This document shows positions 1 to 64,000 of a stretch of 64,000 bases of DNA, one piece after another. The stretch is from Obrimoposthia wandeli (lineage: Eukaryota). The DNA is taken from assembly GCA_977020255.1 (NCBI GenBank), contig CDROCS010003917.1, forward strand, positions 124,001-188,000, written 5' to 3'. Position numbers and translations under genes: made by a program. Within the stretch, counting starts at the first letter, position 1; each line of letters opens with the position of its first letter. The notes under the pieces are model-generated. The model made no database searches. It was given only the letters and a program-made list of their open reading frames with translations, and had not been told where the DNA came from.

Positions 1-206
1 GGCAAAAAGCGGTTGCAAAGGTTAAAGAAGCCGCCAGTAGAGAAATTTGTCGTACTTTCTGAAGCTTGTTATCTTGCTTAATAGTGATAATGAGCTTATT
101 GCAGATTTATTAGTCGCTTTAACTCAAAATCAACGAAACTGGGGTTTTGGTTTGTGTTTTTTATATTTAAGAAATGTGAAGGGCTATCACTGGAACCACA
201 AGCGTG
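1..206 (+). mobile_element. Decayed IS3-family (IS407-like group) transposase OrfB fragment
   Basis: Segments in three different frames (QKAVAK..CRTF / SEACY / SDNELIADLLVALTQNQRNWGFGLCFLYLRNVKGYHWNHKR) resemble the N-terminal HTH region of IS3-family OrfB (WGFGLCFLYLRNVKG.WNHKRVYR). Similarity stops at about nt 206. The left end runs off the window. Confidence 0.7.
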
Positions 207-2366
207 GTTGGCAATTAAAAAATCTAATTGCTCTCTCGTTTCAATACCTTCTGCTACTACGGATATGCTTAATGCTTTTGCCATAGAAAAAATAGCTATT
301 ACAATAGCAACGTCATCTGAATCGTTTGGTATTTTTCGGATGAAAGAACGATCAATTTTTAGTACATCTATTGGCAGCTGCTTGAGGTAACTCAAAGAGG
401 AATAGCCAGTGCCAAAATCATCCATAGCAATAGTGATACCCAAAGACTTTAAGCGCTTTAATGTGTAAATAGAGCTACTTATATCCTCTATAACTGCACT
501 TTCGGTTATTTCCAGCTCTAATTGGCCTGGCTGAATTTGATGCTTGTTGACAGAATCTTCTAAAAAGCTAAACAATTTTTCGTCTTTAAATTGTTTAGGA
601 GACAAGTTAATTGCGATACTAATGTTATTAATATCAATGGAACGCCATTGTTTTATCTGCTTGCACGCTTGCTCAATAACCCAGTAGCCAATATCGAAAA
701 TTAAATTGTTTAACTCTGCTATGGGGATAAACAAATCGGGCGGATACAGAATTTTGCCGTCTCGATGCCAACGGATTAAAGCTTCTACGGAGCGAGTAGC
801 GAATTGCTCTTTACAAAGAGACACTTTAGGTTGCAAGTACAGCGAAAATTCATCAGTCTTTAAAGCTCGCTGTAAGTCATTAATAATTTGTAAATTTTGA
901 TTTTTTTTATTTTCAGTGTCATGAGAAAAAAAACACACTTGACCGCGCCCTTGTTGCTTTGCTTGAAACATCGCTGAATCTGCATGCTTTATTAGCTCTT
1001 CCGAATTATTCGCATCTTTAGGGTAGGTAGCGATACCTATGCTTGCGCCAGGGCGCAATAAATGGGTGTCAATTGTTAATTCTTTAGCAGCTTGTTCAGC
1101 TAATCTATTTGCAAAATCGCTTAAATAATTATCACTTTCGAAGTGCTTAGCGATAATTGTAAACTCGTCTCCACCAATACGGTATAGGGTTTCATTTTCA
1201 CTTAGAAGTAAATTGAAACGATTACTCAATTCAATAAGTAATTTGTCACCTAACTGATGGCCGAAACTGTCATTTGTCCATTTAAAATTATCTAAATCTA
1301 TGAAAAAAAGTGCTAAATTCGAATTGTTTTGATTTGAATTTTTAATTTCCAACTCAAGGTTCTGCATAAATGAGTAGCGATTGGGGATTGTCGTTAACGT
1401 ATCAAAATAGGCGAGTTTATGTAAGTTTTGTTGTGTCTTTAATTTTTCCTCTATATTATTTAAAACGGCTACATAGTGAATAGAGTTGTCTTTACTTACT
1501 ACTTTATGGACATTTAACCAGCCCGGAAATTCACCACCGCCTTTTCGTTGGCAAACAACCTCTCCCGACCAATTATTTTCCGAATCAGCGTCTAAATAAA
1601 CTAACTCTATAATCGATAGTTGAGGGTGTTCCTTTGAATATAGTGTAGGGCGATGATTATGCACATTTTCAGATGAAAAGAGCGTCATCTTTCGATAGCT
1701 GGGGTTAACATCAATTAATAATCCCACATCGTTAATCACAAACACAGCTTCATCTAAAGCATTTAAAGCCTGGTGAGCTAATTGTAAGGATTGCAGAGGT
1801 AAAACTAATGCTCGTTTCAATATTAGATAAAGCGAAAGAACAAACAGTAAACCTACAATTGCTACCTGGGTGATGTCTATCACAAGGCTATCACGCAAAT
1901 TGGACGCAAATCCGGCGTCATCGTAAATTATCTCGATATTACCGATGGTCATGCTCCCTTCTTGAACAGGATAGCGTAAGCGTTTATCGTTAGATATCCA
2001 AATTTTATCATGTAGTTCTGGTATATAGAGAACCACATGATTACTAACTTTAAGCTTCCCGGTATATAAATGATCAAAATTGCCTAAAATTTTGATACCA
2101 AGTACAAAAGGCGATTGCATTTCAGCGTCTAAAATAGCAGCGGCAAACTCTGCAGAGTAGCGTCTGTCATACGATTTTTTATATATATTCCAGATGGTGA
2201 GCTGCACAGATGTAGCAACTCTGCGCGCGACAGAAATACTGCGCTCTTGTAACGCTGATTGCATTATATTCGAGTTGGATTGGTAGCGAACAGCAACAAA
2301 ACTGGTCATTACTACAATTGTAATGACACTCAGTATAATAAATAGACGGGTCGTTAAAGTATTCAA
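96..2366 (-). CDS. Membrane-anchored PAS-GGDEF-EAL diguanylate cyclase/phosphodiesterase; C-terminus replaced by IS-derived sequence
   Basis: Two hydrophobic segments around a periplasmic domain, PAS-like region, intact RIGGDEF, and EAL motifs VEALIRW, ELEITES, DDFGTGYSS, VAEGIET. The usual terminal QGY motif is missing after DFLIANH. Confidence 0.9.
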   Translation of the reverse strand: MNTLTTRLFIILSVITIVVMTSFVAVRYQSNSNIMQSALQERSISVARRVATSVQLTIWNIYKKSYDRRYSAEFAAAILDAEMQSPFVLGIKILGNFDHLYTGKLKVSNHVVLYIPELHDKIWISNDKRLRYPVQEGSMTIGNIEIIYDDAGFASNLRDSLVIDITQVAIVGLLFVLSLYLILKRALVLPLQSLQLAHQALNALDEAVFVINDVGLLIDVNPSYRKMTLFSSENVHNHRPTLYSKEHPQLSIIELVYLDADSENNWSGEVVCQRKGGGEFPGWLNVHKVVSKDNSIHYVAVLNNIEEKLKTQQNLHKLAYFDTLTTIPNRYSFMQNLELEIKNSNQNNSNLALFFIDLDNFKWTNDSFGHQLGDKLLIELSNRFNLLLSENETLYRIGGDEFTIIAKHFESDNYLSDFANRLAEQAAKELTIDTHLLRPGASIGIATYPKDANNSEELIKHADSAMFQAKQQGRGQVCFFSHDTENKKNQNLQIINDLQRALKTDEFSLYLQPKVSLCKEQFATRSVEALIRWHRDGKILYPPDLFIPIAELNNLIFDIGYWVIEQACKQIKQWRSIDINNISIAINLSPKQFKDEKLFSFLEDSVNKHQIQPGQLELEITESAVIEDISSSIYTLKRLKSLGITIAMDDFGTGYSSLSYLKQLPIDVLKIDRSFIRKIPNDSDDVAIVIAIFSMAKALSISVVAEGIETREQLDFLIANHACGSSDSPSHFLNIKNTNQNPSFVDFELKRLINLQ

Positions 2367-2372
2367 ATAAAG

Positions 2373-3443
2373 CTACTCATAACTGCCAAACCAACGGTAG
2401 TAAGCATTGTATTGCTTTTTAAAAGCGGCTTTCTTTTTAATGATTTCTTCGTTTATGGTACTTTTCTGAGCGTAGTCGATCATTATTTTATTCGTGGCTA
2501 CTCGCCATTTTTCGATATCCGAAGTGCTCCACTTATTGATTGTTGTGCCGTTTTGAATGAATTTGTTCATCGATTCAAAGTCTGCTACTTTCGCTTGTAA
2601 AGTGGTAGTCAAAGTGTAAGTTTTAATTGCAGATTCTAAAATTGCTTTTAAGTCTTTAGGCAGCAGTGCGTAAGCACTTTCGTTAATTAAAAAATCAGCC
2701 AAGACAGAAGGCTGCCAAATAGCCGGTACAATTGCATGTTTGCTGATATCGTTTAAACCTAGTTCCCAAGCCCCAGTGGCTGTTGTCCACTCTACTGCAT
2801 CAAGATCTCCGCTTTCTAAAGCAGGTTTAATTTCCTCAGGCAGTAATGGAATAGTATAAGCACCACTAGCAGCAGATAATACCTCACTAGGCAAACCTGG
2901 GCCGATACGAACCTTCTTAGCTTTTAGGTCTGCTAAATTACTCACAGGCTCATTAGAGAGTAAACCAAATTCCATGCCAGGCCACCAGGCAGGGCGCCAA
3001 AGAATACCGTGCGGATTTGATAGAGAATTGGCTAGGGCAGTACCTTCACCTGCGAAAAAGAACATCATTGAAGCATCAATATTCATAAAGTCGAAGGGGC
3101 CAGCATTGAGTAGTGCCCAAGCGGGGTTCTTGCCGGACCACCAATTAGGCCAACCATTACCCATTTCAATAGTGCCTTGTTGCACAGCAGTATAGATATC
3201 TGATCCAGATGTGATTTTACCGCTGGGGTGTACTGTAATGTTTAAACGCCCAGCACTCATTATTGATACTTGACTGGAGAAATCTTGCAATGCTTTAAAG
3301 TCTATCGTATGGCTATTTGCCTGAGATTGAAGTTGCCAGTTAAAGACAGTGGGTTCTTTTTGTATGCAGCCTGTTAATGCAGCAGTTAAGCTTACGATAA
3401 AAACTAAAGTAGCCGCTAATTTGCATCTATTATTACAATTCAT
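2373..3443 (-). CDS. TRAP-type (DctP/TakP-like) solute-binding protein, predicted lipoprotein
   Basis: Lipobox LTGC. DctP-family segments GRLNITVHPSG, WWSGKNPAWALL, LADLKAKKVRIGPG and EIKPALESGDLDAVEW. Confidence 0.8.
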   Translation of the reverse strand: MNCNNRCKLAATLVFIVSLTAALTGCIQKEPTVFNWQLQSQANSHTIDFKALQDFSSQVSIMSAGRLNITVHPSGKITSGSDIYTAVQQGTIEMGNGWPNWWSGKNPAWALLNAGPFDFMNIDASMMFFFAGEGTALANSLSNPHGILWRPAWWPGMEFGLLSNEPVSNLADLKAKKVRIGPGLPSEVLSAASGAYTIPLLPEEIKPALESGDLDAVEWTTATGAWELGLNDISKHAIVPAIWQPSVLADFLINESAYALLPKDLKAILESAIKTYTLTTTLQAKVADFESMNKFIQNGTTINKWSTSDIEKWRVATNKIMIDYAQKSTINEEIIKKKAAFKKQYNAYYRWFGSYE

Positions 3444-3855
3444 CTGTGAACCCTTTGTTTATTCTATATATGGATAAAGAATATGCTTTTTATAAGAATT
3501 ATTCTTAAATGATAAAGATATCATATATGCAGCTCAAATAATTTAAAATGTTTGTATGGAAAATAAGGGGTATTAATTTTTTTCGGTTGACGAAAAAAAT
3601 ATGAGATATGCGTGATAAATTAATCACTAAAGCAAAGCTATTTAATGGTTTAGTTAGTTCTAAATATACTATATAGCCAGTGTATATGTGAATATAAATG
3701 GCTAGCATAAAGTATATTTCAGGATCGGGAAGCGATTAATTCGCTATAATAAGTTCTAAAACCTAACATAACATCAGTGTATGATTATACATACACTTTT
3801 TAAGAGTGAGTCTGTTAAAGCTCAGAACGGGACGGGATGACGATGTAACTAGAAT

Positions 3856-63346: not shown

Positions 63347-64000
63347 CTATAGTCCGACTAAAATACTGGGTAAATAAGTAGCGGTTGCAGGCCAAACGGC
63401 CACAACTACAAGCACTAAGAGCTGCATTAACACAAAGGGTAATACTCCCCAATACATGTGTTTATAAGTTAAACTTTTTGGTGCTATCGAGCGAAGGTAG
63501 AAGATAGACGGGGCCATTGGAGGCGTTAGGTAAGAGGTTTGAATAACAACCATTACCATAATTGCAAACCAAATAGGATCAATGCCAGCAGCTTTAATAA
63601 AAGGTGTAAAAATAGGAATGCATATCAAAACGATAGAAATCCAATCTAATACGAAGCCAGCAACGAAGACGATGGCTAAAAAGAAAATGATCAAGCCGGT
63701 TTTTTCAAATCCAAAATAGCCAACTAAATCACGCACTAACTGGCCACCTCCTGATACTGCAAATAAGCTGGTAAACATAGTACCGCCAACAATAATTAGC
63801 ATTATCATTGCCGTTACTCGAATCGTGACTTGTAGAGCTGCTATTAGATTTTTATAGCTTAGCTCGTTGAACAAAGCTGCTAAAATTAGTGCACCTATAG
63901 CACCCACTGCCGCGGCTTCTGTCGGTGAGGCGGCCCCGGCTAATAAAGAGCCTAATACAGCAAAGATTAGCACTAATGGGGGGACCATTGCTTTGAAGGT
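63347..64000 (-). CDS. dctM: TRAP transporter large permease DctM, C-terminal part (5' end outside the window)
   Basis: ASPTEAAAVGA, GIDPIWF and TSYLTPPMA motifs. Confidence 0.85.
   Translation of the reverse strand, partial: TFKAMVPPLVLIFAVLGSLLAGAASPTEAAAVGAIGALILAALFNELSYKNLIAALQVTIRVTAMIMLIIVGGTMFTSLFAVSGGGQLVRDLVGYFGFEKTGLIIFFLAIVFVAGFVLDWISIVLICIPIFTPFIKAAGIDPIWFAIMVMVVIQTSYLTPPMAPSIFYLRSIAPKSLTYKHMYWGVLPFVLMQLLVLVVVAVWPATATYLPSILVGL

What the first reader, a model, noticed from the sequence alone, without database searches (positions are those of the whole stretch)
96..3443. Orphan lipoprotein TRAP solute-binding protein coupled to a membrane diguanylate cyclase/phosphodiesterase: candidate new c-di-GMP sensing module
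Seen: a DctP/TakP-like binding protein gene ends 6 bp before a TM-periplasmic-TM-PAS-GGDEF-EAL gene on the same strand. No dctQ or dctM is adjacent, the binding protein carries a lipobox (LTGC), and the GGDEF is intact with no RxxD I-site (SENE at that position). Known: binding protein/enzyme pairs act as sensors, e.g. NspS-MbaA in Vibrio cholerae (an ABC-type binding protein) and DctB-DctS in Bacillus (a TRAP-type binding protein with a kinase). Inference: this protein is a receptor rather than a transport component, feeding an organic-acid (2-oxoacid- or lactate-like) signal into c-di-GMP. I am not aware of a characterised TRAP-binding-protein/GGDEF-EAL pair.
Basis: partly seen in the sequence, partly recalled or inferred. 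Interest (0 to 1): 0.72.

Follow-up and report, generated by a model that had tools for sequence, protein, structure and literature searches.

The report
TRAP-type lipoprotein paired with c-di-GMP sensor
A membrane-tethered nutrient-binding protein that has lost its transporter sits, in nearly all related marine bacteria, directly in front of a membrane sensor enzyme, so the pair very likely forms an unnamed signal-sensing module; the copy in this window has a damaged enzyme tail.

Summary
The two genes are real. Both lie on the minus strand, 6 bp apart.

Gene 1 (2373-3443) is a DctP/TakP-type binding protein with a lipobox. Gene 2 (96-2366) has the order TM, periplasmic domain, TM, PAS, GGDEF, EAL.

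In 53 related loci from several phyla, 49 of 51 assessable ones keep the pair. Only one locus has dctQM beside it. The binding protein always travels with the same roughly 130-residue periplasmic domain, while the cytoplasmic output changes: PAS-GGDEF-EAL, PAS-GGDEF, histidine kinase or hybrid kinase. The two trees agree.

The periplasmic domain has no Pfam family and is predicted to be Cache/PDC-like. Its distant relatives sit next to SBP_bac_3 binding-protein genes.

The six TakP cation/carboxylate-site positions hold compatible residues that never vary in the subfamily. This fits an organic-acid ligand.

Corrections:
- The last 36 residues of this EAL domain are unrelated to all homologues, and the QG[FY]xF end is missing.
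- The missing I-site is peculiar to this lineage.
- The downstream flank is cut off by the window edge.

The scan noted a similar pair elsewhere in this genome (s1-241208).

The parts
3444..3855 (-). Intergenic region upstream of the binding-protein gene. It holds a terminator-like hairpin after nagA (3797-3776), promoter-like hexamer pairs (3692-3663, 3547-3520, 3537-3509) and an AAAGGG ribosome site 8 nt before the ATG.
   Evidence: Consensus scans only; promoter-like sites are no more frequent than in shuffled sequence. Sequence read. No Rfam family.
2373..3443 (-). Gene for a DctP/TakP-type solute-binding lipoprotein (356 aa).
   Evidence: Pfam DctP 3.7e-30. NCBIfam TRAP_S1 56.9 bits against a cut-off of 50. 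AF2 model pLDDT 89.6. Foldseek TM 0.83-0.90 to 2zzv, 7ug8, 2hzl and 4pet.
3366..3443 (-). Signal peptide with lipobox L-T-G-C. Cys26 is the codon at 3366-3368.
   Evidence: Cys26 is invariant in 42 aligned homologues and always follows a hydrophobic leader. The residue after the Cys is never Asp.
2907..2909 (-). Codon of Arg179 in the motif KKVRIGPG. It aligns with the carboxylate-binding arginine of TakP-type proteins.
   Evidence: Invariant in alignment A1. Aligns with the Arg of K[ML]R[IV] in 2zzv, 4pet, 7ug8 and 5cm6. TakP Arg177 forms the salt bridge to pyruvate (PMC1839085).
2367..2372 (-). 6-bp spacer between the stop of gene 1 and the TTG start of gene 2.
   Evidence: Across homologues the gap ranges from -8 to +43 nt in most loci.
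96..2366 (-). Gene for the membrane sensor enzyme (756 aa): TM1, periplasmic domain, TM2, PAS, GGDEF, EAL.
1872..2279 (-). Periplasmic domain (about residues 30-165), predicted Cache/PDC-like, with no Pfam family.
   Evidence: No Pfam hit in 39 members. AF2 pLDDT 80.6: a long helix, then an alpha/beta core with five strands, then a helix. VIA Z 10-11 to sensor domains 3li8, 4onx, 4u64 and 2zbb. Foldseek finds WalK, CdgS9 and dCache domains.
1446..1772 (-). Cytoplasmic PAS domain (residues 199-307).
   Evidence: Pfam PAS_9 7.9e-06, just under its cut-off; clear in homologues.
942..1412 (-). GGDEF domain (residues 319-475) with an intact GGDEF motif and SENE in place of the RxxD I-site.
   Evidence: Pfam 4.6e-42. 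Motif columns.
210..881 (-). EAL domain (residues 496-719), Pfam profile positions 2-222 of 236. The EAL, N, ExxE, DDFG, K and E motifs are present.
96..206 (-). Aberrant 3' end: residues 721-756 plus the stop codon. It is unrelated to the conserved end of all homologues. The homology breakpoint lies at about position 205, inside a short palindrome (194-209).
   Evidence: blastn against L001 stops at 205. Three-frame translation and C-termini of homologues. Contig depth in run X1 appears continuous across 151-258, and the same run holds a contig that carries the canonical end.

Best explanation
The two genes encode a binding-protein-dependent sensor. This is inferred from comparative genomics and predicted structures.

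Proposed mechanism:
1. The lipid-anchored TakP-like protein captures a small carboxylate, probably bridged by a cation, in the periplasm.
2. It docks on the Cache/PDC-like periplasmic domain of the membrane enzyme.
3. That changes the balance between c-di-GMP synthesis (GGDEF) and breakdown (EAL) through the PAS linker.

The binding protein is a receptor and does not serve as a transport subunit. It and the periplasmic domain form one inherited input module. Other bacteria join that module to GGDEF alone, to histidine kinases or to hybrid kinases.

In this window the enzyme has lost the conserved end of its EAL domain. Here the module may act mainly as a cyclase, or it may be decaying.

Shown: gene order, its conservation, the domain swaps, the predicted folds and the conserved site residues. 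Inferred: docking, the ligand class, and the direction of the c-di-GMP change.
For: 1. Linkage. 49 of 51 assessable loci, with binding protein at 52-88% identity, have the sensor gene directly downstream. Gaps are mostly -8 to +43 nt. The organisms are Gamma- and Alphaproteobacteria, Verrucomicrobiota and Bdellovibrionota. All other neighbours vary.
2. No transporter. A Pfam-verified DctM probe finds dctM adjacent only in L020. The other hits are 8 kb away in L031 and 60 kb away in the window.
3. Output swapping. The same N-terminal TM-periplasmic-TM module precedes PAS-GGDEF-EAL, PAS-GGDEF, HisKA-HATPase, and the kinase with a receiver domain. Well-supported branches of the sensor-domain tree force at least 3 changes of output type.
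4. The two proteins are inherited as a unit. 26 of 36 bipartitions are shared. Patristic distances correlate at r = 0.64, reached by 0 of 2000 permutations.
5. The ligand site looks live. Through 4pet/5cm6, TakP Arg177, Tyr100, Gln156, Glu214-Trp215 and Glu240 map to Arg179, Trp101, Glu158, Glu218-Trp219 and Gln244. All are invariant in 42 sequences.
6. The lipoprotein Cys is invariant.
7. The periplasmic domain is predicted as Cache/PDC-like. Among its closest structures are partner-binding domains such as WalK and the LapD orthologue CdgS9.
8. Distant relatives of that domain lie next to SBP_bac_3 genes in 5 of 5 assessable loci. For P0100, P0101 and P0104 the match survives with the periplasmic part alone, at E 1e-5 to 7e-7.
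9. Across the family GGDEF, EAL and mostly RxxD are intact.
Against: - No interaction, ligand or c-di-GMP effect was measured or modelled.
- Congruent trees follow from co-inheritance alone and do not prove contact.
- The residue after the lipid-modified Cys is never Asp. Under the E. coli sorting rule that would send the protein to the outer membrane, away from an inner-membrane sensor. Sorting rules differ between bacteria, so this is unresolved.
- Two loci (L014, L036) have the binding protein without the sensor gene.
- In L020 the pair is followed by dctQ-dctM, so a transport role is not excluded in every member.
- The loci were found with peptide patterns taken from the query, so only close relatives were sampled.
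- This window's copy lacks the EAL end.
Confidence: 0.7

Rival explanations
1. The lipoprotein is a ligand-independent accessory partner of the sensor, in the way YycH/YycI act on WalK or CpxP acts on CpxA. It has a binding-protein fold but no signalling ligand. Any small molecule is sensed by the Cache-like domain itself.
For: Cache/PDC domains usually bind small ligands directly (fold matches). The periplasmic domain has its own invariant residues: R49, W59, D80, E82, F97 and G142. The binding protein is unusually conserved over its whole length, with mean column identity of 63%, which could reflect protein contacts.
Against: All six positions of the TakP cation/carboxylate site hold compatible residues and are invariant. 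That is hard to explain without a ligand.
Confidence: 0.12
2. The protein is still a transport subunit that serves a TRAP membrane unit encoded elsewhere. Its place next to the sensor reflects co-regulation or a dual role, as with BctC-BctE.
For: L020 has the order binding protein, kinase, DctQ, DctM. The window holds a DctM-like gene 60 kb away. Databases name the protein a TRAP transporter subunit.
Against: Only 1 of the related loci has dctQM adjacent. The invariant lipid anchor is unusual for Gram-negative TRAP binding proteins. The outgroup L054 has a twin-arginine-like leader with RR in its N-region and no family-type lipid anchor. The link to the periplasmic domain is kept through changes of output.
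Confidence: 0.1
3. In this particular genome the pair is a decaying or rearranged copy. The 3' end of the enzyme gene was replaced, the EAL barrel is incomplete, and the protein may be unstable or inactive. A second, intact-ended copy or strain carries the function.
For: Homology stops at position 205 and 36 unrelated residues follow. The source-like run X1 holds two variants, and one contig continues past 205 with the canonical C-Q-V-G-Q-G-F-Y-F end. The scan noted a similar pair on another piece of this genome (s1-241208).
Against: The reading frame stays open for 756 codons, the same length as homologues. All other motifs are intact. The binding-protein gene is intact and 87-88% identical to L001. 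Contig depth in X1 is even across the junction.
Confidence: 0.35

Closest known systems
NspS-MbaA of Vibrio cholerae
   Same: A binding-protein gene without a transporter lies next to a membrane GGDEF-EAL enzyme that has a periplasmic domain between two transmembrane helices. The binding protein acts on that domain and sets c-di-GMP turnover (review PMC8050422).
   Different: NspS is an ABC-type SBP_bac_8 protein that binds polyamines. Here the partner is a DctP/TakP-type lipoprotein with a carboxylate site. The MbaA periplasmic domain is described as dCache-like, whereas this one is a single Cache/PDC-like module. No experiment exists for the present pair.
ScrB-ScrC of Vibrio parahaemolyticus
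   Same: A binding protein works with a membrane GGDEF-EAL enzyme. Distant relatives of the present periplasmic domain also sit next to SBP_bac_3 genes, the family of ScrB.
   Different: ScrB is SBP_bac_3 and depends on the ScrA-made signal. Whether the ScrC periplasmic domain is homologous to the present one was not tested, because no ScrC sequence was available from a tool.
DctB-DctS(-DctA) of Bacillus subtilis
   Same: It is the only TRAP-type binding protein known to act as a co-sensor rather than a transport subunit (Graf et al. 2014, cited in PMC12718363). Kinase-output members of the present family resemble it in layout.
   Different: Its output is a DcuS-type kinase working with the DctA carrier, in a Gram-positive bacterium. 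The present family has a different sensor domain, is mostly Gram-negative and marine, and includes c-di-GMP outputs.
TakP / TTHA0766 / 7ug8 TRAP binding proteins (2-oxo- and 2-hydroxy-acid binders)
   Same: Same fold (TM 0.83-0.90, 21-26% identity). The positions of the arginine and of the cation ligands hold compatible residues.
   Different: Those proteins are soluble transport subunits encoded with dctQM. The present subfamily is lipid-anchored, lacks dctQM, and has its own Trp-rich invariant motifs (GWPNWW, WRPAWWPGMEFG, EWTT, WQP), so the ligand's side group probably differs.

Membership tests
DctP-family TRAP solute-binding protein (PF03480) | Sequence match above the curated cut-off | tested here: met
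   Pfam DctP 105.7 bits against a cut-off of 23.4. NCBIfam TRAP_S1 56.9 against 50, but TIGR00787 only 64 against 175.
DctP-family TRAP solute-binding protein (PF03480) | Two-lobe binding-protein fold with the conserved carboxylate-binding arginine | tested here: met
   AF2 pLDDT 89.6. Foldseek TM 0.83-0.90 to TakP-type structures. Arg179 is invariant and aligned to the family arginine.
DctP-family TRAP solute-binding protein (PF03480) | Encoded with the DctQ and DctM membrane subunits (a working tripartite transporter) | tested here: not met
   dctM is adjacent only in L020. There is none within 8 kb in the other loci except at the edge of L031. In the window the nearest is 60 kb away. The window's downstream flank is cut at 95 bp.
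Binding-protein-dependent c-di-GMP sensors (NspS-MbaA kind) | Transporter-less binding-protein gene adjacent and co-directional to a membrane GGDEF-EAL gene with a periplasmic domain, conserved across species | tested here: met
   49 of 51 assessable loci keep the binding protein next to a sensor gene. 29 of the 53 related loci have a GGDEF-EAL or GGDEF output.
Binding-protein-dependent c-di-GMP sensors (NspS-MbaA kind) | Physical contact between the binding protein and the periplasmic domain; ligand-dependent switch of enzyme activity | not testable with these tools
   No multimer prediction or assay was available. Support is indirect only: output swapping and tree congruence.
Bifunctional GGDEF-EAL enzymes | GGDEF active-site motif and RxxD inhibitory site | tested here: inconclusive
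   GGDEF is present. RxxD is replaced by SENE in the window and by GPNE in L001, but is present in 17 of the other 18 homologues compared.
Bifunctional GGDEF-EAL enzymes | Complete EAL domain with all conserved catalytic segments | tested here: not met
   EAL, N, ExxE, DDFG, K and E are present. The final QG[FY]xF segment and profile positions 223-236 are missing. All 18 other homologues keep them.
Cache/PDC-like extracytoplasmic sensor domains | Long N-terminal helix followed by a PAS-like alpha/beta core between two transmembrane helices | tested here: met
   AF2 secondary structure. VIA Z 10.2-10.9 to 3li8, 4onx, 4u64, 5wbf, 3lid, 2zbb and 6d8v. Foldseek hits to WalK, CdgS9 and dCache domains. 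This is a prediction and has not been confirmed by a solved structure.
Cache/PDC-like extracytoplasmic sensor domains | Match to a curated Cache/sCache/CHASE sequence family | tested here: not met
   No significant Pfam family in any of 39 members. The best is CHASE8 at E 0.023 in one member.

The most novel reading that the evidence does not exclude
The unannotated periplasmic domain defines a large superfamily of sensor domains specialised for docking binding proteins. It has about 1100 representative clusters at E <= 0.001.

This superfamily has exchanged two things:
- its partner class: SBP_bac_3 in distant members, and a dedicated lipid-anchored DctP/TakP branch here;
- its outputs: c-di-GMP enzymes, kinases and SpoIIE phosphatases.

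The DctP branch would report one conserved marine carboxylate to biofilm and motility control in many marine lineages.
Probability: 0.45. Interest if true: 0.8.

Novelty: new variant of a known kind. Interest (0 to 1): 0.65.

Why it matters
Only two binding-protein/GGDEF-EAL pairs are listed in the field's 2021 review, and both use ABC-type proteins.

This finding adds:
- a whole conserved subfamily of TRAP-type binding proteins that has left transport for signalling;
- a new, unnamed periplasmic sensor domain;
- culturable hosts (Neptuniibacter, Marinomonas) in which the ligand and the c-di-GMP response can be tested directly.

It also warns that database names such as 'TRAP transporter substrate-binding protein DctP' mislabel these genes as transport parts.

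Tried and rejected
- Exact look-up of the window's binding protein in the assembly collection found nothing, so the flank beyond the window edge could not be fetched.
- No reading frame restores the EAL end, so a simple frameshift is rejected.
- Window 1-230 has no repeat in the window or the loci, so an insertion-sequence copy could not be shown.
- Rfam found nothing upstream. The only hit, a CpoB thermometer at E 0.09, lies inside the coding region and is taken as chance.
- Promoter-like sites are no more frequent than in shuffled sequence.
- Neighbouring genes gave no consistent clue to the ligand. BCCT carriers lie near the pair in only 3 loci (L004, L042, L044). Genes downstream of the kinase versions are unrelated to each other.
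- I considered a betaine-like ligand because of the many invariant tryptophans. I rank it below a TakP-like acid because the cation/carboxylate site is kept.
- LapD-like inside-out signalling is rejected. GGDEF and EAL are catalytically intact across the family, and kinase outputs exist.
- Literature searches for a TRAP-type binding protein paired with a GGDEF-EAL enzyme found none.
- The word-based large protein search was not used, because the genome scan already answered the synteny question.
Full report
**What is in the window.** Both genes lie on the minus strand. The binding-protein gene spans 2373-3443 (356 aa, ATG start, AAAGGG ribosome site). After a 6-bp spacer, the sensor-enzyme gene spans 96-2366 (756 aa, TTG start). 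Pfam gives DctP (3.7e-30) for the first gene and PAS_9, GGDEF (4.6e-42) and EAL (3.7e-68) for the second. NCBIfam places the second closest to DibA-type phosphodiesterases, far below the equivalog cut-off. Upstream lie nagA and a GalNAc cluster on the same strand. They are separated from the pair by 412 bp that hold a terminator-like hairpin and promoter-like hexamers; this is weak evidence from consensus scans only. No Rfam family is present.

**Corrections to the observation.**
- *The EAL domain is incomplete.* The Pfam match ends at profile position 222 of 236. DNA identity to the closest relative L001 (83%) runs from 3548 down to position 205 and then stops. All 18 other GGDEF-EAL homologues end with C..[GA]QG[FY].[FY]...[PA] (Q[AV]QG in a few), whereas the window reads 36 unrelated residues. 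No other frame restores the motif.
- *The junction is probably real.* In the run that best holds this DNA (X1), contig depth stays near 17.5 from 151 to 258. The same run also holds a second variant (49 differences in 508 bases). One contig matches from 205 upward and continues with letters that translate to the canonical C-Q-V-G-Q-G-F-Y-F end. A copy with an intact end therefore exists in the same sample. It may be a paralogue or a second strain. The scan's note s1-241208 reports a similar pair on another piece of this genome.
- *The missing I-site is lineage-specific.* The window has SENE and L001 has GPNE. 17 of the other 18 homologues compared keep RxxD.
- *The downstream flank is cut off.* Only 95 bp follow the stop codon, so 'no dctQM adjacent' cannot be checked there in the window itself.

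**Conservation of the pair.** A scan of one genome per species returned 53 loci that encode relatives at 52-88% identity, plus one outgroup at 27%.
- In 49 of 51 assessable loci the next gene downstream on the same strand starts with a homologue of the window's first 200 residues. The gap is usually between -8 and +43 nt.
- L014 and L036 lack that gene. In L027 and L052 the contig ends first. In L049 and L051 both genes are interrupted.
- Clustering all ORFs of the loci shows that only these two genes are shared. Every other neighbour differs between lineages.
- Multi-pass membrane ORFs near the pair were scanned against Pfam. Only L020 has DctQ and DctM, in the order binding protein, kinase, DctQ, DctM.
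- Using that DctM as a probe found just two more hits: 8 kb away at the edge of L031, and at 63.3-64.0 kb in the window.

**Output swapping.** The partner genes fall into four architectures behind the same N-terminal module: PAS-GGDEF-EAL, PAS-GGDEF (L005), (PAS-)HisKA-HATPase, and the kinase with a receiver domain. On trees of the binding protein and of the sensor N-terminal region, 26 of 36 bipartitions are shared. Patristic distances correlate at r = 0.64, reached by 0 of 2000 permutations. Well-supported branches of the sensor-domain tree force at least three changes of output type. Congruence by itself only shows inheritance as a unit. The stronger argument is that the binding protein stays with the periplasmic domain while the cytoplasmic part is exchanged.

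**The binding protein.** The AF2 model is confident (pLDDT 89.6). It superposes on TakP-type TRAP binding proteins that hold lactate, pyruvate or 2-oxo acids with a cation (TM 0.83-0.90, 21-26% identity).

The TakP paper names the pyruvate and sodium ligands (PMC1839085). I mapped them through the printed alignments to 4pet and 5cm6, whose residue spacing matches TakP numbering:

| TakP | Window |
|---|---|
| Tyr100 | Trp101 |
| Gln156 | Glu158 |
| Arg177 | Arg179 |
| Glu214-Trp215 | Glu218-Trp219 |
| Glu240 | Gln244 |

All six window residues are invariant in 42 sequences. The subfamily also has its own invariant Trp-rich motifs, so the ligand's side group is probably not that of pyruvate. 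Mean column identity is 63% across phyla, which is unusually high.

A hydrophobic leader ending in an invariant Cys marks every member as a lipoprotein. The outgroup L054 instead has a twin-arginine-like leader with RR in its N-region. The residue after the Cys is never Asp, so the target membrane is uncertain. Public databases call these proteins TRAP transporter subunits and give no signalling name.

**The periplasmic domain.**
- No Pfam family matches any of 39 members.
- The AF2 model (pLDDT 80.6) shows a long helix continuing from TM1, a second helix, a five-stranded alpha/beta core and a helix into TM2.
- Structure searches give Z 10-11 to extracytoplasmic Cache/PDC sensor domains of kinases, DctB and the LapD-orthologue CdgS9, and lower scores to CitA (Z 9.4) and WalK (Z 8.9).
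- A profile search of 1.84 billion representatives found 45 clusters at E <= 1e-30, 192 at <= 1e-10 and 1121 at <= 0.001.
- Seven of the distant hits were looked up. In the five loci that show the upstream flank, an SBP_bac_3 gene is adjacent: four directly upstream on the same strand and one divergent. Outputs there include kinases and SpoIIE phosphatases.
- With a profile of the periplasmic part alone, P0100, P0101 and P0104 still score E 1e-5 to 7e-7 at full database size. P0139 is borderline and P0110 is not significant.
- This suggests that the domain type is generally partnered with binding proteins.

**Mechanism and rivals.** The best reading, at about 0.7, is a binding-protein-dependent sensor of the NspS-MbaA kind. 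It uses a lipid-anchored TRAP-type receptor for a cation-bridged carboxylate. The rivals are:
- a ligand-independent accessory role (0.12);
- a continuing transport role with a distant DctQM (0.10);
- independently of the above, decay of this particular copy (0.35).

Docking, the ligand and the direction of the c-di-GMP change are all inferred.

**Comparison with what is known.** The 2021 review of binding proteins in signalling lists NspS-MbaA (SBP_bac_8) and ScrB-ScrC (SBP_bac_3) as the only GGDEF-EAL cases. The one TRAP-type co-sensor on record is DctB-DctS of Bacillus. Four literature searches found no TRAP-type binding protein paired with a GGDEF-EAL enzyme. The principle is known. Three things are new: the binding-protein class, the dedicated lipoprotein subfamily, and the unnamed sensor domain. 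I therefore rate the finding as a new variant of a known kind, with interest 0.65.

Noticed in passing
window 1-81 (+): An open frame enters from the left window edge and stops at 79-81. It is convergent with the sensor gene. It may be the end of the gene that now abuts the rearranged EAL 3' end.
   Followed up: no
window 194-209: A perfect short palindrome (AACCAC-AAGC-GTGGTT) spans the point where homology to L001 ends (position 205). It may be the site of the rearrangement, or a coincidence.
   Followed up: no
window 63347-63997 (-): A DctM-like gene lies at the far end of the window, seen as two tblastn segments that overlap by about 20 nt. It may be frameshifted or may run off the window. 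It is 60 kb from the pair.
   Followed up: partly
L020:810-5957: A Rhodospirillales MAG has the order binding protein, histidine kinase, DctQ, DctM. It is the only transporter-linked member and a possible picture of the ancestral state. A partial second binding-protein copy lies at the contig start (6-572).
   Followed up: partly
L049:8001-11266 and L051:8001-11182: In these two loci both the binding-protein gene and the sensor gene are split into pieces. These are either pseudogenes or indel errors of long-read assemblies.
   Followed up: partly
L056:918-3930, L057:3122-7741, L059:171-3229, L060:1966-5541, L062:431-3211: Distant relatives of the periplasmic domain, with kinase or SpoIIE-phosphatase outputs, each have an SBP_bac_3 gene next door. 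This hints at a wide, unnamed class of binding-protein-partnered sensors.
   Followed up: partly
L004:11441-13063, L042:5279-6862, L044:1823-3391: BCCT (betaine/carnitine/choline) carrier genes lie within a few kb of the pair in three loci. This is a weak hint about the ligand, too rare to rely on.
   Followed up: no
window 402-909 in run X1: The run that best holds this DNA has two variants of the sensor gene: one with 1 difference and one with 49 differences in 508 bases, at depths 12.6 and 9.4. The sample holds either a paralogue or a second strain.
   Followed up: partly
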